A DNA stretch of 64,000 nt, from NCBI RefSeq assembly GCF_009834535.1, contig NC_045704.1:17112001-17176000 (forward strand), given 5' to 3'. Both the position numbers and the translations under genes were made by a program. Origin of the DNA: Camelus ferus (lineage: Eukaryota). A model generated the notes under the pieces. It searched no databases. It had not been told where the DNA came from and saw only the letters and a list, made by a program, of their open reading frames with translations. The stretch's first letter is position 1. Every line of letters starts with the position of its first letter. Positions 15,521 through 54,488 of this stretch are shown here, in pieces.

Positions 15521-17269
15521 TAGCTCTATGTCAAAATGGTTATTTTCATGTATGTGACTTTATTTCATGTGTCCTCTAGTGGCACACACCACGGTCAGAC
15601 CTAGTACTTGCACGCAAAGCCTCTACGCCAACCACACTGTATGTACAGGTTGACGTACCCACCACCAATGCCAGACTTGGCACACAGACATGCACACGCA
15701 TGGAAGGCCACCGCACACAGAGCCAGAGAGTGCCTCCCGAGCACACACGCAGCGAGGGCTCCATGATCATCGAGACAAGGGAAGGACCTTACAGGATAAA
15801 TACATGCGCCCACTCCCTCCTGCACACATGTCACCCACAGTGGGAACCCCCAATACCAGCCCCCAGCTGGACACACATGTCATGATTCCACACCTTTGGC
15901 TCTTCACTCTGCCAAGGCTCCCAAGCCTGGCACACAGTCAGTCTTTCCTGAACGCCCCTTGCAACGTATGCAGGCCGTGTACACATGCACTCGGCCGCCA
16001 TGGTCTGACTGTACTCGCCAGCCCCCCACTGACGCCATGCTCTCCCTTCATGCCCTGGGGGAGGGGGCAAATTCACCTAACAGGATGGTAAGAGACTAAA
16101 AGCTACTGAGTTAAGCATCTCTTTGGATATTTCTCTAAATCCAGGGCCTGCTCCCCAACTCTGCAGGCCCCAGGATGGAGGGAGAAAGCAGGGAGTGGTC
16201 AGCGGGCCATAGGCTTTCTCTTCAGATCTTTACCAGGGGTGCAAAAGCTCTGAGGACCCTCTCAGTTGGACCTCCACCCCAACCGCCTCCCCTTTTCACT
16301 TTCCACTAGCAATCCATGTCATTTTCTTCTCCGTCCACACCCTTCTCTCAGTGGAGCTGAGTCCATAGTCATGAGCCCTCACTTAAAGTCTTCCCCTCCC
16401 CCTCCCATGGCCCCAGTGAGCATCCAGCAGGACTTCTCCAGGAGGCCAGAGGAAATACGGTGTGGTGCTAGAACCCCCTGGGCAGATCCAAGCCCCCAGT
16501 AGGGATAAAAGAGGGTAGAAATACATAATGGTGCAGAACAGGGGTTAGGCTCTGGGGAAACTTGGGGGAGTCCTGTCTCTGCACAGAGCCCCTCTCCCTG
16601 GCACACTGTTCAAGGCCAATGCTACAAAAGTGATGAATAAATGAAACTAAGGGAGGGGGTGGAAAGGAAGAGGGGCAGAAGAAATGACTGGCAGGGAGAA
16701 AGAATGAGAGAAAAGGAGAAAGGAGAAGGGAAAAAAGAGAGAAAAAGAAAGGGAGGGGTGGAGAAAAGGAAGATGGAAAAGAAAGAAAAGAAAACCTGAG
16801 GAGTCGGGGAGAGAAAGCTTTTATTAAGAGGAGGAAGAGACAGAGAAACTGGAAAACAGGGAGAAAGAGAAACCTGCAAAGGAGATGGAGAAAAAGGAGC
16901 CAGGGAAGGATGAGAGGAAGAAAAGAGAAGGGAGCAAAGAGGCAGGAGTAGGCAGCCAAAGGGGTTCCCCAAGTTATAGACTTTGCCCAGAGAGCTGAGG
17001 GGCGCACCTTGGCTCCCCAACATCACTCCCAGGCCCTGGAGCTCCACTGCCTGCCTCTCCTGCTGAATACACCGCTGCCTCGGAGCCCCATCCCAGCTAC
17101 TCCCTCTCCCAGCTTCCACCCTTCCAGCAGTCCGAGGCACCCCGTTTCTTTCCCTTGCCCCTCATCCCCACCCCCAGCCCTATCTCATTCCCCATGCCCT
17201 CTTACCTCTCCCCCCATGCACCCTGCTTCCTTCCGAGCTTCAGACAGCATCACCAACCAATATCCTCAC

Positions 17270-18048
17270 CATGATCACCCTACACCGGCCCCCACACCCC
17301 CAGGAAAGGAAAAAACAAAAAGGCGGCACCGCCACCAGCCCTGACCCCCTCTCGCCTCGTTTTCTCCACAGTCGCCCCTTCCCCAAATGCAGGGTCCACA
17401 ATGGGGATCCCGCCCAGCCCAGTGAGCCTCTCCAAAGCGCCGAAGCCAGCCGGGCGCGGATGCCACCTCCTCTCTCCTCTCTGCGTTGGCTCCTTTTTGT
17501 ATATGATGGCCCCGGCTGCGATGTTTTATTTTCGCCTTTTTATTGGTATTATTTTCCCCCCTTTTCTTTATTTTTTGGCCTGGGGGCGGCAGCGACGAAG
17601 CGCCTACCGCCGGGTCTCCGCCAGCTCCCCGGCCGTCCGCTCTTTCTCTAGTCTGCGCTCCTCTCGCCTCCCTCCTTTCTCTTCTCTGCCTCCGCTCTGC
17701 TCCGTCCTTTCAGCTCCGTCCTCAGTCAACTGCTCTCTCCTCTCTCTGGTGCCTCCTCCTCCACGCCTCTCCTTTCCCCTTTCTTCTTGCCCCTTCTCCC
17801 CTTTTTCTCTCCCTCTTCACCTCCTCTACGTCCTCATTTCTTCCCATCCTTCCCCACCCCCCCATCACCACGCACATCTCTCCTTTCGTTTCCTCATTAC
17901 CACCGACAGCAAGCCGACCCCCTCCCTCACCCCCCAATAATAAAAATACCCAGCCAGGGGGCAAAGCCCCGACTGGGCGCCGAAAGGGAGGCGAAAGGGC
18001 CGGGGCTGCAGCGGCGGCGGGCAGCCGGAGCGCGGTGCGGAGCGAGCG
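17270..18048. promoter_or_regulatory. CpG island, probable alternative POU2F2 promoter (continues into the gap)
   Basis: Dense CpG (cggcggcgggcagccggagcgcggtgcggagcgagcg) running into the N gap. Minus-strand donor GGG|GTGAGG with exon end at 17931. Confidence 0.75.
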
Positions 18049-18731
18049 NNNNNNNNNNNNNNNNNNNNNNNNNNNNNNNNNNNNNNNNNNNNNNNNNNNN
18101 NNNNNNNNNNNNNNNNNNNNNNNNNNNNNNNNNNNNNNNNNNNNNNNNNNNNNNNNNNNNNNNNNNNNNNNNNNNNNNNNNNNNNNNNNNNNNNNNNNNN
18201 NNNNNNNNNNNNNNNNNNNNNNNNNNNNNNNNNNNNNNNNNNNNNNNNNNNNNNNNNNNNNNNNNNNNNNNNNNNNNNNNNNNNNNNNNNNNNNNNNNNN
18301 NNNNNNNNNNNNNNNNNNNNNNNNNNNNNNNNNNNNNNNNNNNNNNNNNNNNNNNNNNNNNNNNNNNNNNNNNNNNNNNNNNNNNNNNNNNNNNNNNNNN
18401 NNNNNNNNNNNNNNNNNNNNNNNNNNNNNNNNNNNNNNNNNNNNNNNNNNNNNNNNNNNNNNNNNNNNNNNNNNNNNNNNNNNNNNNNNNNNNNNNNNNN
18501 NNNNNNNNNNNNNNNNNNNNNNNNNNNNNNNNNNNNNNNNNNNNNNNNNNNNNNNNNNNNNNNNNNNNNNNNNNNNNNNNNNNNNNNNNNNNNNNNNNNN
18601 NNNNNNNNNNNNNNNNNNNNNNNNNNNNNNNNNNNNNNNNNNNNNNNNNNNNNNNNNNNNNNNNNNNNNNNNNNNNNNNNNNNNNNNNNNNNNNNNNNNN
18701 NNNNNNNNNNNNNNNNNNNNNNNNNNNNNNN
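18049..18731. other. Assembly gap (683 N) covering the core of the CpG island
   Basis: Run of N seen directly. Confidence 1.
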
Positions 18732-20270
18732 NGCTGAAAGAGATAGGGATGCAGTGACAGAGAGAGGGGAGAGGGACAGGGAGTAGAGGGGGACAACGAG
18801 ACAAGGAGAAGCACAGAGACATACAGAGATAGACAGAGACACACAGAAAGAGATAGAAGGGAAAGAGAGAGGAGGAGCAGAGGGGGACTCAAAAGCATGG
18901 AGCCACCCTGAGGCCCAGAGACTCACAGAGACACCCAGAGACACAGAGACATCCAGAGACAGAGACAGGGGGAAAAGGGAGCAGAAAGACGGCAGGGAGC
19001 ACAGAAGAATGAGGGGCATGGAAAGACTCACAGAGACAAAGAGATGCCTAAAGACAGAGACACACAGAGACACACAGAGACAAGAAATACAGGGACAGAG
19101 AGAGAGTGGTGGGGAGCAGAGGGGAACCCAAAGGCAGGGAGAGGCCCTATGACCAGAGACTCAAAGAGACAACAGAGACACAGAATACAGGAAGGAAAGG
19201 GAGCAGGGAGAGGGGTGGGAATACAGGGGATATGGAGGCAGGAAGAGACTTAAGAGAGACAGAGAGATGCCAGAGACACACAGAAACATATTGGCATGTG
19301 GGGGTATGAGTGAGTAAGACAGGTGGGGAGAGCAGTTGGGGACATGAAAGCAGAGAGAGGCATTAAGAACCACAGAGACACCCAGAGACAAAGAGATAAG
19401 GAGAAGAGATCTATGCAGAGAGATGAAGAGCCAGAAAGACGGCCACAAAGAAGCAGACACACAGACAACAGATATGAATAGTCACATATATACATATAGA
19501 GAGAGAGACAGAGACAAAGACACAGACACACACACACAGAGACAGAGATAAGACAGATAGACATGTAAGAATCAGAGACAGGAGAAGGAGCCATACTCAG
19601 AGAAGTAGGGAGGCAGAGGCAAGACAGAATTGGAGATATACAGACAGAGGAAGACACAGAGACAGAGACAGAGACAGAGACAGGCACAGAGAGTTAGACA
19701 CAGAGATAAGAAAGATGTGCAAAGTCAGAGAGATATGAAGAAAGAGGCAGAGAGAGAGAGAGGCAAAGCCAGAAAGACACTGACAGAGACCAAGATGCAG
19801 AGACTGAGACAGAGACAGAGAAAGAGGCACAGAGAGAGGGGTAGAGGCAGACAAGGAGACAGATGACTAGTGAGATGTAGACAGAAACATAGAGAATTAG
19901 ACATAGGGATTCTGAGAGAGAACTTAAGAAACAGACAGAAAGAAGGAAATGTGCAAGAGAGCCACAGACACCAAGACAGAAAAAGAGACAAGGAGAAATA
20001 CAGAGACAGTGAGAGACAGAGAGCAGAGAAAGAGACTTAGAGAGTCAAGTGATGACACAGAGAAACACAGAGATACAGAGATACAGAGAGAGACATGGAT
20101 AGAGACTGTAAGAGACAGGAAAGGAGACACTGAAGGAGACAGAGAGATTTGGTGAGATGGAGACAGACACTGGAAGAGGCATCCTGGTGGACAGAGATCC
20201 GTAGGGAGATACAAGACAGAGGTAGCAAGAGATAAATGGAGACTCGGAAATAAAGGGTCAAATTTGGAAA
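18732..20270 (+). repeat. ~1.5-kb purine-rich (GAGACA/CAGA)n-like low-complexity block
   Basis: Continuous degenerate gagacagagacacagaga sequence with very few T on the plus strand. Confidence 0.9.
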
Positions 20271-20591
20271 AGGTGCGGGGGTGGGGGAAGGGAACAAAGA
20301 GACAGAGCCTACAGAAAGCAGAAAGATGCAGGCTGGGGTGAGAGCAGAGACCTGGAGAGTGAAAAGCAGGTCTAGGGGAGCACCAAGCAGGGAAGAGCAG
20401 GTGAGAGCAGGTGGGGAGAGACAAGAATTGCAGGGAGGGGAGGGGAGCAAGGAGGGCAGGACCCAGTCACTGAACACCTCCCCTGTGCCTGGCACCTTAA
20501 GGCTGGGGAGGGAGAGGAAGGAAAGGGGGCTGAGGAGGAAGGGACCCTGGGCCAGGGGTAGGTCTGCGCTGGGTCTGAGGAGGACACATGG

Positions 20592-28030: not shown

Positions 28031-29191
28031 TTGTTCCTTCAAGAATTTTGGCCCTGACCATATCACCTTGTGATTCCCCAGCCTCTGGGCAGCTAGAGGC
28101 TGGGAGGTCAGGAGTATGCCTGGCTTCCAAGGCATGGAGACGCTGGTGCCCCTGGCTCTCCTCTCTAAAAAGTAAATTCTCAATTAAAAAAAAAAAAAAA
28201 ACCTAGGGGAAAAAAAAAAAGAATTTTGGATGGGATGAGGAGGAAAACAAAGGACAGGCAGTAGAGGGAGCAGAGTAAAGGGAGGTAGAAGGTTTTCATT
28301 GGTTTTTAAGGTGGTAGAAATTTGCATGTATTTATAGACTAAGAAGAAGGAGAGAGAAGGAAGGACTGTTGAAAGAGAAGGGAAGAATGATGGAGTAATA
28401 TTGTGGGAGTCATAATAGGATGGATGATGCCTGGGTAGAGAGGTTGGACTAGAACAGAGCCTGGAGAAGTGAAGTAGATCTGGGTGTGAATACCTGTAGG
28501 TCTGAATAGGAAGCTAAAGGAAATCATGACTGATCAGCCTTAATTTTATTTGTTGAGAATGAAAGGTTAGGATTGGAGGATACTCACAGGAGAGTGGTGA
28601 CTGAGAGAAGAGGCTAAGAAGTTGGAGTTGTGCCTATATGCACCACTTCCCCACCATTCTTCTCTGAGTCAATCTTAACCATGCGAACCAAGGTAGATAG
28701 ATGGGGCAGAGGTCAGGGTGTATGGCAATCAAGAGTGTGCTGGTCATTTTCCCTTTGCCCTTCCAGGTCCACCTCCACTCTTCTCTGCCCATACAGACAG
28801 CATCGGTCTGGGCTCCCTTGCCCTCTGACTTTTAACTGGGTCCTCCATGGGAAGCACCAGCAGGACCTTAGAGAGTAGGGGAAGAAAGTGTCTCCTGCTC
28901 CAGCTGTGCATCAGTACTGTGGTTCTGACGGTGGTCATACCCTCCACGATACCAACACCTCTCAGGTATGTTCCGTGGTCTCACAAGGCTCCAGTAATAC
29001 CATTTCCTTTCCCGACCCCAGTAGACCTGTAGTCACAACTTCCTGCTGCCTTCACCTCCCTTGTTCGTTCCCTCAACCTGACCCACACCCTCTGCAAATA
29101 CTGCCTTCATTAAGTTCTCTTCAAAATCACAGCTGTGGTGCCTCTGTTTCCTGCTGGGACTCTGACTATTAGAGAGCTGGCCAGAGAGATC

Positions 29192-29447
29192 AGATGGCTC
29201 AATATGAGGCTCTGGATGGGCAGGGAAGGGAGAGGAGCCAGGAGGGGTCTGGCCAACTGGCAGAAAACAGAGATCAAGGGAGTGGAGCTGTGTCTATGAG
29301 TTGATGTTACAGGTGTGATGGCAGGGGAGGCCTGCCAGGCCTGGAAGGCAGGTGCTGGGATCAGAGCAGGATACGGATTTCAAATATGGAAGACAGTACT
29401 GGGTTGTAGTTAAAATCAGGATTTTTAATTTGGGACCTAGAGAGTCC
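29192..29447 (+). repeat. Left arm of a ~250-bp near-perfect inverted repeat
   Basis: 29200-29447 is the reverse complement of 30208-30455 with only 1 substitution and two 1-nt indels (aligned by eye). Confidence 0.97.
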
Positions 29448-30007
29448 TGTGTTAAGAATCCTGCTCTGCCCCTTTACTAAATGTTACCCATGACTTTTCT
29501 CCCTCCCTCATCCCCCCAAATCATTCAACAATCACTTACCAATGCATACTTCTAGCTACTAGAGGATGGGTCAGATCCAGTCCCTCTCTTAACATGCTCT
29601 GGCTTAGTGAGGGATGTGATCACTGGGGACATCTCAAAGGAACATACAAGGGGCAGTGGGAACTCAGATGAGGCAGACACCGACTCTAGTCTGGCTTCAC
29701 AGAACTGGGCTCCCTAGAGTCTTAGGTCCTCATGTTCTGCCACCCTCTCTTCCACCTCTTCATTGATATCTGTTGACTCCTTGGTCACTTCCCCTCATTC
29801 CTGAAGATTCTAACACATCCCCACGGACTTCCTCTCCACCCTAGTCCCTGCTGTCCTGCTGGGATACTTAACCTCCATGATGATCCATCCTTCCAATTAT
29901 CTAGCCTCTTGGTCTCTTTCCACCTCATCCTTGGTGACCTTCATCCCACTCTAGCCACCCACTCCCATGACCACACCTTGGACTTAGTCATTACCCGGAA
30001 GTGCAGT

Positions 30008-30272
30008 TCACATAGTGAATACTTACTGAGCACTTGTATCACATGCCAGACACTGTGCCAGATGGCTTACATATTTACCCCTCACAAAAACCTGCAGAGT
30101 TGGTATTAGTATCCTCATTTCAAAGATGAGGATACACACTCAGGAAGGTGAAGTCACTTCCCTGAGTGACACATTTAATGAAGTGGCAGAGCCAGGACTG
30201 TAACATGGGACTCTCTGGTCCCAAATTAAAAATCCTGATTTTAACTACAACCCAGTACTGTCTTCCATATTT
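30008..30272 (-). mobile_element. Near full-length MIR inserted in an L2 ORF2 relic
   Basis: tactgagcacttg..ccagacactgtgccag..aagatgagg..gaagtggcagagccagga..aactacaacccagtactgt. L2 endonuclease-like sequence (ccacaccttggacttagtcattacc) lies to the left and resumes to the right. Confidence 0.8.
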
Positions 30273-30463
30273 GAAATCCAGTATCCTGCTCTGATCCCAG
30301 CACCTGCCTTCCAGGCCTGGCAGGCCTCCCCTGCCATCACACCTGTAACATCAACTCATAGACACAGCTCCACTCCCTTGATCTCTGTTTTCTGCCAATT
30401 GGCCAGACCCCTCCTGGCTCCTCTCCCTTCCCTGCCCATCCAGAGCCTCATATTGGACCATCT
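30208..30463 (-). repeat. Right arm of the ~250-bp inverted repeat
   Basis: See left arm; it spans the MIR head plus the flanking L2-like sequence. Confidence 0.97.
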
Positions 30464-30689
30464 TATTTACCCTTGACTTGTTCCATTTATCTCTCTGTAT
30501 ACTCTTTACATTTAATAACTTAATGCTTAAAAAAAAAAACCCAAACAACAACAACAAAAACCTCTTACTCAGTTTAAACAAGTGTTTCCTAACGCCTTCA
30601 TACGTGCTATTCCACCTGTCTGGAATACCCTTGACCATTCTATCCAGCCAAAGACTTCCCACTCTTCCTTCAAGAATGAGCAGAAATTA

Positions 30690-31960
30690 ATCACCAGGGA
30701 GAAGAAAGATAAACCACAATGATATACTACCACATGTCTGTCAGCTTGGCAAAATTAAAAGCATCTGACAATACCAGATACTGGCAAGGACGTGAGGCAA
30801 AGAAAATGCTCATTCAGTGCGAGTGGGAGAATAAACTCGTATAAACACCTTAGAAAAGTGGTTTGTCAGTGTAGTAGGCTGAAAAATGTCCCCCAAAAGA
30901 TGTCCATGGCCTAATCCCTGGAATCTGTGAACGCTATTTTATGTGGCAAAAGGACTTTGCAGATGTGATTAAAGTAAAGATTTTGAGATGAGGAGACTAT
31001 CCTGGATTATCTAGGTGACCCCTAAATGCAATCACATGATTCCTTGTAAGAGAGAGGCAAAGGGATATTTGATACTGACAGAAGAGAAGGCAATGTGAAC
31101 CACAGAGGTAGAAACTGGAGTGATGTAGCCACAAACCAAGGGATGCTAGCAGCCACCAGAAGCTGGAAGAAGCAAGGAACAGATTTTCGCCTAGAGTGGG
31201 GCTGCCAAAAACCTAGACTTGGGCCCAGTGAAACTAATTTTAGATTTCTGGCCCCCAGAACTGTGAGAGAATACATTTCTGTTGTGTTAATCCACCAGGT
31301 TTATGATAATTTGTTACAGCAGCCTTAGGAAACTAATTAGGCAGTATCCCAAACCTGAACATTCTAGCCCATGTCCAGCAATTCTCCTTCTGGGTATATC
31401 CCAACAGAAATGCAAGCATTTGTTTTTTTTTTTAAAAATGCTTAGGAGTGTTCACAACAACATTATTTATTACAACTCCATGCTGCTAACAACCCAATGT
31501 CCATCAACAGTGTAATGCATGAGCTATCTATGAGGTATTCAAACAATGAATACTATACAGCAATAAAAATGAGTCAACTACAAATAAACACAATGTGGAA
31601 GAATCTCACAAACACAATGCTGAACAAAAGAAAACAGACGCAACAGAAAACATATTGTATGATTCCATTTGTATCAAGTTCAAAAAGAGATAAAATCACT
31701 GAGTGACATAAAACTAGAAAAAGCAGAAGAAAAGCAAGGAACTATTACTGTAAAAGCCAGGACAGTGTTCCTAGCTAGGGGGAGAGAGGGCTTGCTTATG
31801 ATCAGGAGGGAGTGCATGACAGAGGGAGTGGGGAGACTTCTGGGGTGCTGGTAATGTATGTCTCATTATGGAACACACAAGTGTTTTACAACAGCTTATT
31901 AACTACATTTGTGTTTTATGCACTTTTCTGAATGTTAATAGTTCACAATTAAAAAGTATC
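30690..31960 (+). mobile_element. L1ME-type LINE 3' fragment interrupted by an MLT1 LTR
   Basis: gatatactaccacatg..ggcaaaattaaaagcatctgacaataccag..ggcaaggacgtg.. then, after the LTR, ccagcaattctccttctgggtatatcccaacagaaatg..gaatactatacagcaataaaaatg..tgtatgattccatttgtat. Confidence 0.85.
30870..31339 (+). mobile_element. MLT1C-like MaLR solo LTR (470 bp) with 5-bp target-site duplication
   Basis: Starts tgtagtaggctgaaaaatgtcccccaaaagatgtcc and ends ttgttacagcagccttaggaaactaatta. Flanked by gtcag (30865-30869) and ggcag (31340-31344). Confidence 0.9.
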
Positions 31961-32699
31961 TTGGTGGTGGTGGCGGTAATTTTTAATAAAATGAACAGGG
32001 AGTTTCCCAATCCATGAAGCCTTCCTGGGCCTCTTCACCCAGGGTCATCTGGGCTCCTCCAGCCTCTGATGCTTTTTCAGTCAATGACCACTCTGGACTG
32101 TGACCTACAGTGTCCCAGTCTGGCTCCCTCACCAGAACAGGAGCTGTCCAGTGCAAGCACCCAGGCTAGCATCCTCTTATGGTCCCCAGTAAAGGCCAGC
32201 CAGCCCAGGGTCTGGCACCTGGGAGGGCTCGTGGAACGTGTCCTGCTGTGTCCCAGGCATACTGGGCTTGCCTCACATTACCACCTTATATTGTCATTGT
32301 CAGGGCCCTGTGTGTCGGTCACTGTGGTAGCAGAGGACTGCTGACTGAATGAGGGTGTGGCTGATTCTACATTGCCACTTACCTTTATCTCTGTCCATCT
32401 GTCTCTCTACATCCTGTTCAGGAATGTTCCCTAAGGCCTCCTCGAGGGCGGTTCTCTGACAAAAATGGCCTCTCTCTGTCATTCTGTTGAACTCCCATCC
32501 ATCCTTCAGGAGCCAGCTCCAGGCTCCTCTTCTCTGTGAAACCATTTCCCGCCTTTCTCTGAGCTCCCACAGGCCCCTATTTCCCTTGGCTGCAGCCTGT
32601 CCCTGTCCCGCCCCATAGAATATTTCTCCACTTCTGAAGCTCTTTGATCTCCCTGGGTTGTCCTCGTGGCCTGGGTCTGACCCACTTCTGGGCCTCAGC

Positions 32700-33230
32700 A
32701 CTCTGTCAGACACCCAGCGCGGGCTCTGGCAAGCCCAGGTGAGCTCCACAGCGCAGGCGCTTAGGAACGCTCTGGAAAGCGCGAGACATCGCCTCAAGGT
32801 TCCCGCCAACATCAACTCCTGGCATATACTGCGCCTGCGCGGACTCCGGCGGCCTCCAGATTAGGCTTCCTTATTTCCGGCAGGCACTGGCTATGAAGGA
32901 CGCACCCCCGCGCCCCGGGCCGCCAACCGCGCCCCCAGCTTAAAATACGGCGCGCGAAGGGCCTGAAGAATGAGGTGGGGCCCGCGGGTGGGATGGCCTA
33001 CTCGGGCGGGGCTGAAGTAGGGGGCGGGGCTTCAGCAAGGAACAGAATGGAGGTGGGGGAAGGGCCAGGTTCCGAAATGTTGTCCACTAAAGGGGCGGGG
33101 CCCACCATTCGTAAATTGGGGGTGAGGGGGACAGGCAAGCCCAGGGCCAGCGGCAGAGGCGGATGCCGGAATTCAGCCCAGGGGAGGAGGGGACAAGCAG
33201 CAGCTCCCAGCCCCAAGCGCGGGAAGCCCC
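32700..33230. promoter_or_regulatory. Small CpG island / promoter (candidate distal POU2F2 promoter)
   Basis: CpG-rich, with two NRF1-type motifs (gcgcaggcgc 32751-32760, tgcgcctgcgc 32830-32840), an ETS-like ttccgg and GC boxes ggggcgggg at ~33021 and ~33093. Confidence 0.75.
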
Positions 33231-34303
33231 AAGCATAGGAGGGCCTCCAATCTTGGAAGGTAGTGAAAAGAAAGCCTACTCTCGCCCAAGCCAAGGAGAG
33301 TTCCCCTAACAGGAGGTAAGTTGAAAGGTAGTGGAAGCCATCACCTCTCCTCAACCTGACAGCCTCCACTAGGGGAAAGCTGCTCTCCATCTCAGTGCTG
33401 CTCTATTCCTCAGGCAACTCATTTCCCCTCTGAGCCCATTTAAATAGATCTTGTCTAGGTGCCCTGCAGACCTTAGCTTCCTCCCAGAAATGGTAAGTGG
33501 AAACAGTCTTAAGATCACACAGCAACTAACTGGACCAGGTCTTGACTCCTGGGCAGGACTCAGCTCCTAGACTTAACCACTATATCCCTTTTTATCCACA
33601 CAGATCAGAGGTGCACAATCGGTTCCCAGGTGTGTGATTCTCTCCCCCAGGAAACGCTAGTGGTTGGGAATCCCTGCCCACTCCACCCCCACCCTGGGTC
33701 CCCTTCTCCCCCAGGAAGGAACACCCCAGGTATTGTGTAAGAAACTTGAGTTCCTAAGCCCTTAAACAAGCTGTGGGGAAAGAGCAAGAAGCCACAACCT
33801 CAGCTGTAGCCACAGGGCAGCAGGAAGCATTCGGCCTCGGGAGGGACAAGAGTGCCAGATTTAAGACAAGGTGACTGCCTAAGTGTCAGGGGAGGGAAGC
33901 CATCTGGAGAGGGGTCCTAGGCAGAGAGCACTGCCTGCTGATCCATTTGGTTTCCAAACCTTTGTGTTCTATCAGCCTGAGAGAGAGCTGGCCCACCTTA
34001 CTGAACTAGTTTAAAATACCAGCACTCCCAAGGACATACAGGAGCAAAGCATGTGCAAATGAAGGTGGGAGAGTTTATGACTCCAAGTCATTGTTTCCTC
34101 CTTAGACAGATGAGGAAACAGGCCAAGAGAAGGGAAAGGCTGTGGCAGTAGGCAGCAGATGATCCAGCATCCTGCCCACCTTCCAGCCCAATACTGGGCC
34201 AGAACTCCAGGATTGGTAGTGCTCTCATCAACTCCTCCCTCCAGCCCATAAAGAAAGAGTCCTAGGGAGCCCTGATGCCCACCTATGCCCCATCCAGGGC
34301 AGT

Positions 34304-34309
34304 TTTATT
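34304..34309 (-). terminator. DEDD2: DEDD2 polyadenylation signal AATAAA
   Basis: tttatt on the plus strand ~770 nt downstream of the DEDD2 stop codon. Confidence 0.75.
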
Positions 34310-35081: not shown

Positions 35082-35473
35082 TCAGGAGGCCTCAGTTGGG
35101 CGCCGTCCCCCCTCCTCCTCCATCAGCAGCAGGCGGCGCCGGCCAGCCTCGTAGTCGGCCTCGTCCACACTGACCAGCAGTCGGACAGCCTCCCGGCCCA
35201 CGGCCTCACGCAGAGCCTCAGTCAGGAACACGCCCCGCAGGGCCTGCAGCAGGGCACCACTCAGGTAGTCACCCCAGAAGGCGTCCAGATAGGAGAGCTC
35301 CGAGAACTTGATGTCACAGACCACAGAGCCCAGGTCCCGTGAGCGCAGGACCGCAGTGGCCTGCCCAAACACGTCCAGCTGCCGTGCCAGTGCCTGGGGC
35401 CGCCGGGATGCCACACCCTGCTCCAAGGCTGGCCCATGTTCGCAGTACTCCGCTCGCACCCTCAGCCGGATGT
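35082..35473 (-). CDS. DEDD2: DEDD2 last coding exon (392 nt; D-IRLRVRAEYCEHG...EEEGGRRPTEAS*)
   Basis: Translation matches the DEDD2 C-terminus; acceptor ctgcag|AC. Joined CDS 47926-47599, 46048-45929, 43271-43131, 35473-35082 = 981 nt = 326 aa + stop. Confidence 0.98.
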
Positions 35474-35799
35474 CTGCAGAGAAGGACGGACTGGTCAGGG
35501 AGGGGCTGACACCCAAAACACTGCACAGGGGGAAGAGGGGGACTGGAGGAGGGAAAGGGGGACTGCCACCCTTCCTCCTTCCCTCAGGCCTCCTCCTGCT
35601 GCCCCCCACCGTGGGTTGTACTGCACCAGCCCCACATCCTTCCCCCTTCCGGTAACCACACCCAAGTACGGATGACACCCGCACTCGGTTTCCCTCCTGT
35701 GGTCTGGCCTGTTACCTCCTAACCTAGTGACCTTCTCTTCCCCTTACATGGCCCACTCCAGCCTCACCACTCCTTGCTGCTCGGTCCCCTCATCACCAG

Positions 35800-52315: not shown

Positions 52316-52463
52316 GTATAAACACTGGCTCCAGACTTTCTGGTTGGTAGAGGCTGGTGAGTGACTTGATGGGCAAGAGGACTCCTGAGACATCCCCTCT
52401 CCCCTTGAGTTCCTAGTGTCTCACTAGGTCTCCCTTCTTTCTCCAGGCACTGCCTTCCACACA

Positions 52464-54488
52464 ATGGCAGAAGTGGTGGCTGAGGTGGCTGAGGTGGCTG
52501 AGATGCCAACACAGATGACACCAGGGGCAATGGAGATGTCAACACCGATGTTAGGGGAGAAGACAGAGATGTCAACAGAGGTGACCGAGATGACACCTGG
52601 AGAGGCCCTTGCCTCATCCCTCTTCTTCCAGTTCATGTGCTCTGAGTGTGGCAGCCTCTACAACACACTGGAGGAAGTCCTCTCACACCAGGAGCAGCAT
52701 GTGCCCACTGTCACAGAGGAGGAGGAGGCGCTGACCACCCTGGACACTGGCCTGGAGCCAGAGCTAGTGCCAGGCACTGAGGATGGGCCTTTCCAGTGCG
52801 GTGAGTGCAGCCAGCTCATCCTCTCCCCCAGTGAACTCCTGGCCCACCAGGACGCCCACCTCCGGGAGTCTGCAAGCCAGATCCAGTACCAGTGTGGAGA
52901 CTGCCAGGAGCTGTTCCCCTCACCTGAGCTGTGGGTGGCTCATCGCAAGGCCCAGCACCTTTCTGCTACAGCAGTTAAACCTCCAGTGCCACCTCCTCTG
53001 CCTCCCCTGACACCACCACCTCCACCCCCTGCTCCACCCGAAATCAAGATGGAGCCCTATGAGTGTCCCGAGTGCTCTACCCTCTGTACCACCCCTGAGG
53101 AGTTCTTGGAGCATCAAGGCACCCACTTTGACTCCCTAGAGAAAGAAGAGCGCAACGGGCTAGAGGAGGAGGAGGAGGAAGATGAGGATGAAGAAGATGA
53201 GGATGAAGAGACAGAAGATGAGGAAGAGGCAGCAGCAGAGGTTGGTGATGATGCTGTGGGAAGTGAGAAGTCCACAGCCAGCCAGGTCCAGGCTTGTGGG
53301 GATTGTCCACAACACTGGACTTCACCAGCAGCACGCAGGCGACACCAGCGGGCATCCCATGGCCCAGCATCGGTGGCTCACCCCTTCCACTGCAGCCAGT
53401 GCCAGCGCAGCTTCAGCTCAGCAAACCGGCTGCTGGCTCACGGGCGGGCCCATGTCGGTGGCACACATGAATGTACAGCCTGTTCCAAGGTCTTCAAGAA
53501 AGCAGCCTCACTGGAGCAGCACCTGCGGCTGCACCGCGGCGAAGCCCGCTACCTCTGTGTTGACTGTGGCCGTGGCTTCGGCACAGAACTCACATTGGTG
53601 GCCCACCGGCGGGCCCACACCGCCAACCCATTGCATCGCTGCCGCTGTGGCAAAACTTTCAGCAACATGACCAAGTTCCTTTATCACCGGCGTACTCATG
53701 CTGGCAAGAGTGGGGCACCCCCCACAGCGGTGGTGGCAGCCTCCCCGGCTCCAGCAGAGCCCACGCCCCCACCACCACCCCCAACCCCACCTGCCCAGCT
53801 GCCCTGCCCACAGTGCTCCAAGTCATTTGCCTCAGCCTCCCGGCTCTCCCGTCACCGGCGCGCAGTCCACGGGCCTCCTGAGCGGCGGCACCGCTGTGGT
53901 GTTTGCGGCAAGGGCTTCAAGAAGCTAGTCCACGTGCGTAACCACCTGCGGACGCACACAGGCGAGAGGCCCTTCCAGTGCCACTCCTGTGGCAAGACTT
54001 TTGCTTCTCTGGCCAACCTCAGCCGGCACCAACTGACCCACACGGGCGTGCGTCCTTACCAATGCCTGGACTGCGGCAAGCGCTTTACACAAAGCTCTAA
54101 CCTGCAGCAGCACCGGAGGCTGCACCTGCGGCCAGTCGCCTTTGCCCGTGCACCCCGCCTCCCCATCACTGGTCTCTACAACAAGAGCCCCTACTACTGC
54201 GGGACCTGCGGCCGCTGGTTCCGTGCCATGGCGGGCCTGCGACTGCATCAGCGGGTCCATGCCCAAGCACGGACAGTGACGCTGCAGCCTCCCAGATCAC
54301 CTCCTACCGCCCAGCCCCCGCCCCCCGAGCCTCAGCAGACGATCATGTGCACAGAGCTCGGAGAGACCATTGCCATCATTGAGACGTCCCAGCCACTGGC
54401 ACTTGTGGACACACTGCAGCTGTGCCAGGCGGCACTGGGGGCTAGTGAAGCAAGCGGACTGTTGCAATTGGACACGGCCTTTGTGTGA
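52464..54488 (+). CDS. ZNF526: Zinc finger protein 526 (674 aa; about 14 C2H2/C2H2-like fingers, acidic tract, poly-Pro linkers), single coding exon
   Basis: Intact ORF MAEVVAEVAEVAEMPTQM...LLQLDTAFV matches ZNF526. Acceptor ttctttctccag| at 52447, 17 nt upstream of the ATG. TGERP-type linkers are present. Confidence 0.98.
   Translation: MAEVVAEVAEVAEMPTQMTPGAMEMSTPMLGEKTEMSTEVTEMTPGEALASSLFFQFMCSECGSLYNTLEEVLSHQEQHVPTVTEEEEALTTLDTGLEPELVPGTEDGPFQCGECSQLILSPSELLAHQDAHLRESASQIQYQCGDCQELFPSPELWVAHRKAQHLSATAVKPPVPPPLPPLTPPPPPPAPPEIKMEPYECPECSTLCTTPEEFLEHQGTHFDSLEKEERNGLEEEEEEDEDEEDEDEETEDEEEAAAEVGDDAVGSEKSTASQVQACGDCPQHWTSPAARRRHQRASHGPASVAHPFHCSQCQRSFSSANRLLAHGRAHVGGTHECTACSKVFKKAASLEQHLRLHRGEARYLCVDCGRGFGTELTLVAHRRAHTANPLHRCRCGKTFSNMTKFLYHRRTHAGKSGAPPTAVVAASPAPAEPTPPPPPPTPPAQLPCPQCSKSFASASRLSRHRRAVHGPPERRHRCGVCGKGFKKLVHVRNHLRTHTGERPFQCHSCGKTFASLANLSRHQLTHTGVRPYQCLDCGKRFTQSSNLQQHRRLHLRPVAFARAPRLPITGLYNKSPYYCGTCGRWFRAMAGLRLHQRVHAQARTVTLQPPRSPPTAQPPPPEPQQTIMCTELGETIAIIETSQPLALVDTLQLCQAALGASEASGLLQLDTAFV

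What the first reader, a model, noticed from the sequence alone, without database searches (positions are those of the whole stretch)
29192..30463. Recent ~250-bp inverted duplication seeded in two ancient, oppositely oriented MIRs
Seen: 29200-29447 and 30208-30455 are reverse complements with only 3 differences (1 substitution, two 1-nt indels, ~99% identity) around a ~760-nt spacer. The inner boundary falls inside two MIRs, one at ~29393-29495 (+) and one at ~30008-30272 (-). Further inward the two stay only loosely similar, as expected for independent MIR copies over 100 My old. The outer boundary has microhomology (agatgg, then a 2-nt mismatch, then caatatg). The right arm is the natural continuation of an L2 relic interrupted by the MIR, so the left arm looks like the copy. 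Inference: a fold-back template switch or gene conversion started in MIR homology and overwrote ~250 bp of flank. If this region is transcribed as POU2F2 intron, the pre-mRNA would form a near-perfect ~250-bp dsRNA stem. That would be a potential ADAR, PKR/MDA5 or endo-siRNA substrate created de novo in an immune transcription-factor locus.
Basis: partly seen in the sequence, partly recalled or inferred. Interest (0 to 1): 0.72.

Follow-up and report, generated by a model that had tools for sequence, protein, structure and literature searches.

The report
Ancient flip-flop inverted repeat, re-homogenised in camels
The near-perfect 250-bp inverted repeat is real, but it is an inverted duplication that arose before the living laurasiatherian orders split (tens of millions of years ago by published dates), whose arms were recently copy-corrected in camels and whose 0.8-kb middle has flipped several times in mammals; this is a tidy small example of a known process.

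Summary
Window 29189-29437 and 30217-30466 are reverse complements (about 249 nt, 99%), and short-read contigs from two camel labels show the same hairpin topology.

The reading "recent duplication seeded in two independent MIRs" does not hold.
- Both arms, with the same outer edge, are present in dromedary, pig, water buffalo, minke whale, zebra, cat and a bat. A remnant is present in a mole.
- Elephant and hare carry one arm and an empty target site. So a roughly 296-nt segment, flank plus the first ~110 nt of one MIR, was copied in inverted orientation before the living laurasiatherian orders diverged.
- The left "MIR" is part of that copy.

Two things happened afterwards.
- The spacer changed orientation. 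Camel, zebra and bat have one orientation; pig, buffalo, whale, cat, mole and the single-copy outgroups have the other. That needs 3 changes on the usual species tree and at least 2 on any tree.
- The arms were homogenised independently in camel, cat and bat. The camel tract predates the split between the two camels compared.

The locus lies 4.6-5.9 kb downstream of the DEDD2 stop codon. No POU2F2 coding exon is in the window. A dsRNA role is untested: RNA-library contigs are sparse and show one T>C.

The scan noted similar conversion-maintained inverted repeats elsewhere in this genome (FLNA, SPRR2), but not this locus.

The parts
29189..29437 (+). Left arm (adjacent to the ancestral left flank), the part that is 99% identical to the right arm in camels
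   Evidence: It is contiguous with the left flank in elephant and hare. The marker at 29191 (C) is C in this arm in every species compared.
29438..29500 (+). Inner, unconverted part of the left arm: truncated MIR-like fragment ending at the old duplication junction (..CCCATGAC|TTTTCT..)
   Evidence: 71-81% identical to 30155-30216. The same junction signature sits on the flank-distal arm in pig, buffalo, whale and mole, and on this arm in zebra and bat. It is absent from elephant and hare.
29501..30007 (.). Unique spacer, whose orientation relative to the flanks differs among mammals
   Evidence: BLAST orientation tables. One 839-nt contig covers it in two DNA runs.
30008..30272 (-). Full-length MIR-like SINE. 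Its head (30217-30272) lies inside the right arm and its body lies in the spacer side.
   Evidence: The resemblance to the MIR consensus is from memory only. Its core, 30104-30199, has three weaker copies elsewhere in the window. It forms one continuous alignment block with the arm in elephant and hare.
30217..30466 (-). Right arm (the arm next to the novel junction 30466/30467)
   Evidence: The arm contig has about twice the spacer depth. The marker at 30464 (complement A) is shared by this arm in all species compared. The target site is empty in elephant and hare.
29411..29431 (.). A/T-rich site inside the arm (mirror copy at 30223-30243) that took independent retroelement insertions in other lineages. 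It lies just outward of the inner edge of the camel identity tract.
32500..33250 (.). CpG island between the DEDD2 3' end and the repeat. It may be an alternative promoter that would put the repeat inside a transcript.
   Evidence: GC 0.62-0.65, CpG observed/expected 0.66-0.70. Its function was not tested.
35085..35475 (-). Last coding exon of DEDD2 (stop near 35085-35100), with AATAAA on the minus strand at 34304. This fixes the gene context.
   Evidence: One search gave 100% identity to DEDD2 of many mammals, with Pfam PF20694.

Best explanation
**Origin (shown for the order of events; mechanism inferred).** The structure is an old inverted duplication in non-coding DNA downstream of DEDD2. 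A roughly 296-nt segment, made of about 195 nt of flank plus the first ~110 nt of a MIR-like SINE, was copied in inverted orientation. This happened before the living laurasiatherian orders diverged and after their split from the hare and elephant lineages. The copy was inserted about 0.66 kb away at a site with short microhomology, most likely by a replication template switch.

**Later history (shown).** Two recombination outcomes then recurred.
1. Exchange between the arms flipped the enclosed ~0.8-kb spacer at least twice, and three times on the usual tree.
2. Non-reciprocal copying between the arms (gene conversion) homogenised them independently in the camel, cat and bat lineages.

**Camel state (tract and relative timing shown).** In Camelus one conversion tract of at least 238 nt (about 29200-29437) made the arms 99% alike shortly before the split between the window's camel and the dromedary. 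The inner ~60 nt stayed at 71-81%.

**Function (inferred).** The near-perfect hairpin is therefore a by-product of inverted-repeat dynamics. Nothing shows that it is used.
For: - **Arms in other species.** Both arms are present with the same outer edge in pig, buffalo, minke whale, zebra, cat and bat. The mole keeps the inner part of the second arm with the same truncated-MIR/spacer junction.
- **Pre-duplication state.** Elephant and hare have a single arm contiguous with the left flank. The target site is empty..GGGTAAATCAAAATAGAC.. in elephant and ..ATAAATAAGACGCAGAGTTAGACTTTTCT.. in hare. No hidden second arm scores above shuffled controls.
- **Spacer orientation.** It is colinear with camel in zebra and bat, and inverted in pig, buffalo, whale, cat and mole. 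These are long alignments, for example 1067 nt at 87% in whale and 2068 nt at 76% in zebra.
- **Independent junction signature.** The 29191 C / 30464 A marker stays with its flank in every species, while the truncated-MIR end switches arm with orientation.
- **Concerted evolution.** Outer-arm identity within species is camel 99.6/98.7, whale 91.2, cat 91.0, pig 90.4, bat 88.4, buffalo 82.4, zebra 79.8. In the ML tree the two arms pair by species for camel (100/99), cat (100/99) and bat (100/98). Arm-shared private substitutions number camel 5, cat 9, bat 7, and 0 in pig, buffalo, whale and zebra.
- **Timing in camels.** The right arms of the two camels group together (93/88), and both camels share the 29257/30398 difference. 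The window is 99.43% identical to dromedary over 10 kb.
- **Reality in reads.**
Against: - No camelid outside Camelus could be fetched, so the age of the camel conversion and of the camel inversion is only bounded.
- Spacer orientation rests on one assembly per species (two for camels). With 99% identical 249-nt arms, the camel orientation could be polymorphic or mis-set in assembly. The contigs I could lay do not resolve it.
- The count of three inversions depends on the accepted laurasiatherian tree. Incomplete sorting of an old polymorphism could lower it.
- Absence in hare and elephant could in principle be two precise losses.
- Arms and spacer are somewhat better conserved than the surrounding DNA. 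Purifying selection may therefore add to arm similarity, and a function is not excluded.
Confidence: 0.85

Rival explanations
1. One reading: two independent, oppositely oriented MIR insertions provided homology. In the recent camel lineage a fold-back template switch or conversion starting in the MIRs overwrote about 250 bp of unrelated flank, creating a new inverted duplication.
For: The high-identity tract ends inside MIR-like sequence, and identity drops to 71-81% inward. The arms differ at only about 0.4-1.3% of sites.
Against: The non-MIR part of both arms is already present, with the same outer edge, in pig, buffalo, whale, zebra, cat and bat. Elephant and hare lack the second MIR fragment as well as the second arm. 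The inner MIR parts are 85-90% alike in pig, whale, buffalo, zebra and bat, which is higher than I would expect for two independent MIR copies; that expectation comes from general knowledge and was not tested here.
Confidence: 0.03
2. Assembly artefact: only one arm exists and the second is a collapsed or duplicated short-read error.
For: Near-identical inverted repeats are a known source of assembly error.
Against: In two independent DNA runs the spacer contig ends 30 nt inside an arm on both sides, and the arm contig has 1.6-2.4x the spacer depth. Both states of the 30398 site were seen: G in the DNA arm contigs and A in the RNA-library contig of X24. An independent dromedary assembly and seven other species show two arms.
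Confidence: 0.02
3. The inverted repeat, or the block it lies in, is kept by selection. It could act as a transcribed hairpin (a substrate for ADAR, dsRNA sensors or small-RNA pathways), or as a duplicated cis-regulatory element near DEDD2/POU2F2. Arm similarity would then partly reflect constraint.
For: - The 29025-30500 block is better conserved than its surroundings. 50-nt tiles reach 84-92% identity even in elephant and hare, which have one arm.
- An invariant CAGGTG-containing stretch lies in the arm.
- RNA-library contigs cover 29552-30441 at low depth in X24 and X25.
- One T>C at 30206 would read as A>G on the minus strand, the strand of DEDD2.
- If transcribed, the region folds into a ~250-bp stem, -810 kcal/mol.
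- A CpG island lies 2-3 kb away at 32500-33250.
Against: - The second arm is decaying in several lineages: 123-nt and 133-nt deletions in pig and zebra, loss of the outer part in mole, and retroelement insertions inside arms in pig, buffalo/whale, cat and bat.
- Arm complementarity is down to 80-82% in zebra and buffalo. Hare and elephant manage with one arm.
- RNA contigs in an RNA library do not prove transcription, and their strand is unknown.
- The single T>C comes from a different individual and could be a SNP.
- Rfam finds nothing.
Confidence: 0.08
4. Parallel origin: the inverted duplication arose several times independently in different laurasiatherian lineages, because the site is prone to template switching.
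For: The bat carries a third partial copy of the same segment about 2 kb away (L009:33019-33233), so the segment can be re-copied.
Against: The outer edge, the AT[A]AGA flank marker and the truncated-MIR/spacer junction are the same in all carriers. Independent events would not reproduce both junctions.
Confidence: 0.02

Closest known systems
Recurrent inversion between ancient inverted repeats around FLNA-EMD on the eutherian X. This is Caceres et al. 2007, known to me here only as cited in PMC8327919 and PMC3961182; I did not read the primary paper.
   Same: Old inverted repeats flank a segment found in both orientations in different mammalian lineages. [quoted passage not shown] PMC3961182 cites recurrence across mammalian lineages.
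   Different: - The scale here is far smaller: about 0.3-kb arms and a 0.8-kb spacer, against repeats of many kilobases around genes (the size of the FLNA repeats is from memory).
- This locus is autosomal and non-coding, with no gene in the spacer.
- The pre-duplication state is preserved in outgroups, so origin and target site can be read.
[quoted passage not shown] 2014, PMC3961182; Porubsky et al., bioRxiv 10.1101/2021.12.20.472354)
   Same: The mechanism class is the same: homologous exchange between inverted repeats, re-inversion of the same segment within and between species, and gene conversion between the copies.
   Different: Those cases were detected as polymorphisms within populations and mostly with larger repeats. 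Here the recurrence is inferred between orders of mammals, and polymorphism within camels is untested.
Arm-to-arm gene conversion in sex-chromosome palindromes (Jackson et al. 2021, PMC8327919)
   Same: The arms stay more alike within a species than orthologous arms are between species. Structural changes (inversions, insertions, deletions) concentrate around the spacer and inner arms.
   Different: Those palindromes are at least 8 kb, carry testis-expressed gene families and are argued to be preserved by selection. This one is about 300 nt, non-coding, and its second arm is decaying in several lineages.
Template-switch / microhomology-mediated break-induced replication models for inverted-repeat-associated rearrangements (discussed in PMC8755829)
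   Same: An inverted copy is placed close to its source, with short microhomology at the junctions and a few bases lost at the target. That paper also notes that template switching can turn imperfect inverted repeats into perfect ones.
   Different: The paper deals with 17-33-nt microinversions flanked by 3-75-nt repeats. Here the copied segment is about 296 nt, and the later inversions span about 0.8 kb, long enough for ordinary homologous exchange.

Membership tests
Inverted-repeat-mediated recurrent inversion (flip-flop locus) | The segment is flanked by inverted repeats in the lineages that differ in orientation | tested here: met
   Two arms are present in camel (x2), pig, buffalo, whale, zebra, cat and bat.
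Inverted-repeat-mediated recurrent inversion (flip-flop locus) | Both orientations of the enclosed segment occur while the outer flanks stay colinear | tested here: met
   The spacer is colinear in zebra and bat and inverted in pig, buffalo, whale, cat and mole, relative to camel.
Inverted-repeat-mediated recurrent inversion (flip-flop locus) | Breakpoints lie inside the repeats | tested here: met
   The outermost marker (29191 C / 30464 A) stays with its flank, while the truncated-MIR junction at the inner end switches arm with orientation.
Inverted-repeat-mediated recurrent inversion (flip-flop locus) | More than one independent inversion event | tested here: met
   The states camel C, zebra C, bat C; pig, buffalo, whale, cat, mole I; outgroups I need 3 changes on (mole,(bat,(cat,(zebra,(camel,(pig,(buffalo,whale))))))) and at least 2 on any tree with monophyletic Artiodactyla. 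The species tree is taken from established knowledge and was not inferred here.
Inverted-repeat-mediated recurrent inversion (flip-flop locus) | Orientation polymorphism within a species | not tested
Concerted evolution of repeat arms by gene conversion | Paralogous arms within a species are closer than orthologous arms between species | tested here: met
   Met for camel, cat and bat. Not met for pig, buffalo, whale and zebra, where arms group weakly by position.
Concerted evolution of repeat arms by gene conversion | Lineage-specific substitutions shared by both arms | tested here: met
   Camel 5, cat 9, bat 7, and 0 in the other four species.
   The second copy is present across Laurasiatheria.
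Replicative template-switch inverted duplication (FoSTeS/MMBIR type) | Inverted copy close to its source, microhomology at both junctions, no target-site duplication | tested here: inconclusive
   The copy lies about 0.66 kb from its source. The outer junction shares AT.AGA with the empty site in hare, and the inner junction shares 1-3 nt. About 8-10 nt of the target is replaced. The junctions are too old and too diverged for a firm call.
MIR SINE | Match to the MIR consensus (tRNA-like head, conserved core, L2-like tail) | not testable with these tools
   No repeat library is available, and the resemblance to the consensus is from memory. The core (30104-30199) has three 70-81% copies elsewhere in the window, as a dispersed repeat should.
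ADAR-edited intronic hairpin dsRNA | Both arms transcribed on one RNA, with clustered A-to-G changes absent from the same individual's DNA | tested here: inconclusive
   RNA-library contigs cover 29552-30441 at depth 2-6. One T>C at 30206 appears in one contig, with no matched DNA and no strand information.

The most novel reading that the evidence does not exclude
The conserved 1.4-kb block (about 29025-30500) may be a cis-regulatory or transcribed element near DEDD2/POU2F2, with the inverted repeat acting as a germline flip-flop whose orientation still toggles in camels. Alternatively, the camel-specific near-perfect 249-bp hairpin may be transcribed from the nearby CpG island or by DEDD2 read-through. 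In that case it would be a lineage-specific endogenous dsRNA that is edited or sensed.
Probability: 0.07. Interest if true: 0.6.

Novelty: new member of a known kind. Interest (0 to 1): 0.35.

Why it matters
This case shows how a structure that looks like a fresh fold-back duplication can be an old inverted repeat that was recently copy-corrected. Only orthologous loci tell the two apart.

As an example it is unusually complete for its small size.
- The empty target site survives in outgroups.
- Both junctions can be read.
- The spacer has flipped in several orders of mammals.
- Conversion has struck three lineages independently.
- One 20-nt site inside the arms has attracted retroelements again and again.

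It suggests that arms of only about 300 nt can drive repeated inversion over evolutionary time. That is relevant to anyone using small inversions as homoplasy-free phylogenetic characters. It has no demonstrated consequence for DEDD2 or POU2F2.

Tried and rejected
- **First read-laying run.** I therefore could not lay the outer flanks, a silent control stretch, or raw RNA reads.
- **POU2F2.** Recalled POU-domain and N-terminal motifs have no match in any frame of the window. The window holds DEDD2, ZNF526 and part of GSK3A. No POU gene is among the genes called in the 10-kb flanks of any fetched locus. From memory, human annotation has long POU2F2 isoforms that start near the DEDD2 3' end, so an intronic context is possible. 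I could not test this.
- **Other species.** The alpaca DEDD2 protein has no contig on record. The sloth and mouse-lemur proteins were not on record. So there is no non-Camelus camelid, xenarthran or primate locus.
- **Rfam.** The 28-32 kb region gives only two sub-threshold chance hits.
- **DNA transposon with terminal inverted repeats.** Rejected, because elephant and hare keep arm, MIR and spacer as ordinary contiguous sequence and lack only the second arm.
- **One PRE-1 insertion copied between the pig arms by conversion.** Rejected, because the two inserts are different elements.
- **Direction of the camel conversion.** Only one informative site exists (position 16 of the arm, where both camel arms carry the state of the right-hand arm), which is too little to call.
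Full report
**1. The observation**

The repeat finder reports complementary arms at 29189-29374/30281-30466 (186 nt, 98%) and 29375-29437/30217-30279 (63 nt, 100%). A weaker 62-nt extension at 71% follows inward. A gapped alignment joins these into one arm of about 249 nt. Its differences are:
- one substitution, 29257 C against 30398 A;
- one extra base in the right arm at 30280;
- one extra T at 29438, which marks the inner edge;
- three mismatches in the last 12 nt at the outer end (29191, 29198, 29199).

Inward, 29438-29484 and 30171-30216 remain about 81% alike.

**2. It is not an assembly artefact**

Twenty DNA or unclassified runs under two organism labels hold 94-95% of the sampled 31-mers of 28900-30800.
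- In runs X1 and X10 the region is represented by an 839-nt contig covering exactly 29408-30246. That is the spacer plus 30 nt into each arm, the expected unitig break for k=31.
- Each run also has a 239-nt arm contig at 1.6x and 2.4x the spacer depth.
- The DNA arm contigs carry G at 30398 (the left-arm state), and an RNA-library contig carries A. Both arm variants therefore exist.
- The dromedary assembly GCA_000803125.3 (L001) is 99.43% identical to the window over 10 kb. It has the same repeat with the same inner edge.
- The first read-laying run failed on a filter, so the outer junctions and the spacer orientation were not checked in reads.

**3. Gene context**

| Feature | Window position |
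|---|---|
| ZNF526, single coding exon | 52428-54485 (+) |
| GSK3A exons | about 59-62.6 kb (-) |
| DEDD2, start-codon exon | 47.4-48.0 kb (-) |
| DEDD2, last coding exon | 35085-35475 (-) |
| DEDD2, AATAAA | 34304 (-) |

The repeat lies 4.6-5.9 kb beyond the DEDD2 stop codon.

No recalled POU2F2 motif occurs in any frame of the window. No POU gene is called in the flanks of the fetched loci. A CpG island sits at 32500-33250. From memory, human annotation includes long POU2F2 isoforms that begin close to the DEDD2 3' end.

The 0.57% divergence from dromedary fits that.

**4. Orthologous loci**

I searched with the last DEDD2 exon. I then looked up the encoding contigs with 10-kb flanks. This gave the following loci:
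- dromedary (L001), pig (L002), water buffalo (L003), minke whale (L004), plains zebra (L005);
- Iriomote cat (L006), African elephant (L007), European hare (L008);
- Kuhl's pipistrelle (L009) and star-nosed mole (L010).

BLAST of the camel region against them gave three results.

*(a) Both arms are old.* Both arms, with the same outer edge, are present in pig, buffalo, whale, zebra, cat and bat. The mole keeps the inner part of the second arm fused to the spacer end.

*(b) Elephant and hare show the pre-duplication state.* Each has one arm only, contiguous with the left flank: window 29484-28859 aligns to L007 35102-35714 and to L008 35745-36354.
- In both, that arm and the MIR-like element fall in one continuous alignment with the spacer, which then meets the right flank.
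- Where laurasiatherians carry the second arm, elephant has 12 nt. Hare has a short unrelated string plus two lagomorph SINEs.
- A permissive search for a hidden second arm scores no better than shuffles.
- The duplicated unit is therefore about 296 nt. It runs from about 29192 to about 29487-29490 in left-arm coordinates and includes the first ~110 nt of the MIR-like element. The left "MIR" is part of the copy and not an independent insertion.
- The first bases of the right-hand arm (AT-A-AGA) are also at the empty site in hare (ATAAGA). The outer junction therefore formed at microhomology.
- The novel junctions are 30466/30467 and about 29500/29501.

*(c) The spacer has two orientations.*

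| Orientation relative to flanks | Species | Example alignment |
|---|---|---|
| As in camel | zebra, bat | zebra: window 30235-28219, one colinear 2068-nt alignment |
| Opposite to camel | pig, buffalo, whale, cat, mole | whale: window 29411-30466, 87% over 1067 nt, between colinear flanks |
| Opposite to camel (single arm) | elephant, hare | the ancestral order |

A second, independent signature agrees. The outermost arm marker (C at 29191, A at the mirror 30464) stays with its flank in every species. The truncated-MIR/spacer junction (..CACCCA[T/G]G.CTTTTCT..) sits on the left-flank arm in camel, zebra and bat, and on the other arm in pig, buffalo, whale and mole.

On the usual tree (mole,(bat,(cat,(zebra,(camel,(pig,(buffalo,whale))))))) this needs three changes. 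On any tree with monophyletic Artiodactyla it needs at least two.

**5. Concerted evolution**

I removed lineage-specific insertions and aligned 20 arm copies.

| Species | Identity between the two arms, outer 238 columns | Arm-shared private substitutions |
|---|---|---|
| camel (window) | 99.6% | 5 (shared by all four camel arms) |
| dromedary | 98.7% | counted with the window camel |
| minke whale | 91.2% | 0 |
| cat | 91.0% | 9 |
| pig | 90.4% | 0 |
| bat | 88.4% | 7 |
| buffalo | 82.4% | 0 |
| zebra | 79.8% | 0 |

- For cat, bat and camel, within-species identity exceeds every between-species value.
- A maximum-likelihood tree pairs the two arms by species for camel (100/99), cat (100/99) and bat (100/98). 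The pig, buffalo and whale arms group weakly by position.
- At least three independent homogenisations have therefore occurred.
- In camels the inner 48 columns are only 71-73% alike, so the tract stops at 29437/29438.
- The two camels share the 29257/30398 difference, and their right-hand arms group together (93/88). The conversion therefore predates their split by about the time needed for one substitution and one indel in 2 x 238 nt.
- With the published dromedary-Bactrian split of a few million years (from memory), the tract is several million years old. The error on this is wide.

**6. Mechanism**

*Shown:*
- the order of events (single copy, then inverted duplicate, then repeated flips and conversions);
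- the junction positions;
- the lineage distribution.

*Inferred:*
- The original copy arose by a replicative template switch. It is an inverted copy 0.66 kb from its source, with short microhomology and a few bases lost at the target.
- The flips arose by homologous exchange within the arms.
- The homogenisation is gene conversion. A paper on microinversions notes that template switching can also perfect imperfect inverted repeats (PMC8755829). This is a variant of the same copying step that I cannot separate here.

**7. Function**

If transcribed, the region folds into a ~250-bp stem (-810 kcal/mol).
- Fourteen RNA-labelled runs hold 6-36% of the sampled words.
- Contigs of two of them cover 29552-29768, 29908-30237 and 30053-30441 at depth 2-6.
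- One T>C at 30206 would be A>G on the DEDD2 strand.
- This evidence is too thin. There is no strand information, no matched DNA and no control stretch.

Evidence against a conserved hairpin role:
- The second arm carries large deletions in pig and zebra and has lost its outer part in mole.
- Retroelements have inserted inside arms in four lineages.
- Complementarity is down to about 80% in zebra and buffalo.
- Hare and elephant have a single arm.

The whole 29025-30500 block is nevertheless better conserved than its surroundings. Tiles reach 84-92% identity even in hare and elephant. An ordinary regulatory role for the sequence, independent of the repeat, remains possible.

**8. Comparison with what is known**

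This is the same kind of process as three described cases:
- the recurrent FLNA-EMD inversion between old inverted repeats in eutherians (cited in PMC8327919 and PMC3961182);
- recurrent human inversions mediated by inverted repeats (PMC3961182);
- arm-to-arm conversion in palindromes (PMC8327919).

It differs mainly in scale (0.3-kb arms, 0.8-kb spacer). It also lies in non-coding autosomal DNA and has a readable pre-duplication state. I class it as a new member of a known kind.

Earlier notes of this scan describe conversion-maintained inverted repeats at FLNA and SPRR2 in the same genome. I did not test those.

**9. Verdict**

- The functional speculation is untested and, on the comparative evidence, unlikely to reflect a conserved role.
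- Interest is modest.

Noticed in passing
window 29411-29431 and mirror 30223-30243; L002:30900-31013 and 31763-32004; L003:29988-30235; L004:29855-30153; L006:31856-32352; L009:35339-35509: The same A/T-rich ~20-nt site inside the arm (AAAACCAGGGATTTTTAATTT) received what look like five independent retroelement insertions, each with a 17-21-nt target-site duplication. These are two different PRE-1-like SINEs in the two pig arms, one insert shared by buffalo and whale, a carnivore SINE cluster in cat, and a bat SINE. Camels have none. The inner edge of the camel identity tract lies 6 nt beyond this site.
   Followed up: partly
L009:33019-33233 (Pipistrellus kuhlii): The bat has a third, partial copy (about 213 nt) of the arm plus MIR head. 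It is inserted about 2 kb away, between the equivalents of window 31488 and 31424, and is closest to the bat's own left-flank arm. The segment has therefore been re-copied at least once more.
   Followed up: partly
window 30441 (RNA-library run X24): A 442-nt contig matches 30053-30441 exactly and then continues for 53 nt (CCCATATAAGAAAGCGGGCC...). The continuation matches neither the right flank nor the mirror of the left flank, and no canonical splice signal lies at the break. It may be a chimeric contig.
   Followed up: no
window 30206: T>C in one RNA-seq contig of run X25 (depth 2.5), in the imperfect part of the stem next to the perfect arm. The two DNA runs and RNA run X24 show T. On the minus strand this would be A>G. 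It could be a SNP or an editing site.
   Followed up: no
window 32500-33250: A CpG island (GC 0.62-0.65, CpG observed/expected 0.66-0.70) lies 1.1-1.8 kb beyond the DEDD2 poly(A) signal. It may be an alternative upstream promoter on the minus strand.
   Followed up: no
window 29025-30500, peaks at 29200-29250, 29350-29385, 29900-29975, 30275-30300, 30375-30425: This block is clearly better conserved across ten mammals than the DNA on either side. It includes a near-invariant stretch, GGAAGGCAGGTGCTGGGATCAGAGCAGGATACGGATTT, which contains an E-box. It is a possible conserved non-coding element.
   Followed up: partly
window ~16500-20500 (assembly gap 18049-18732): Long purine/pyrimidine-rich low-complexity sequence surrounds an N gap. 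I saw it only through repetitive Arg/Asp/Glu/Thr-rich and Ser/Leu/Cys-rich ORF translations.
   Followed up: no
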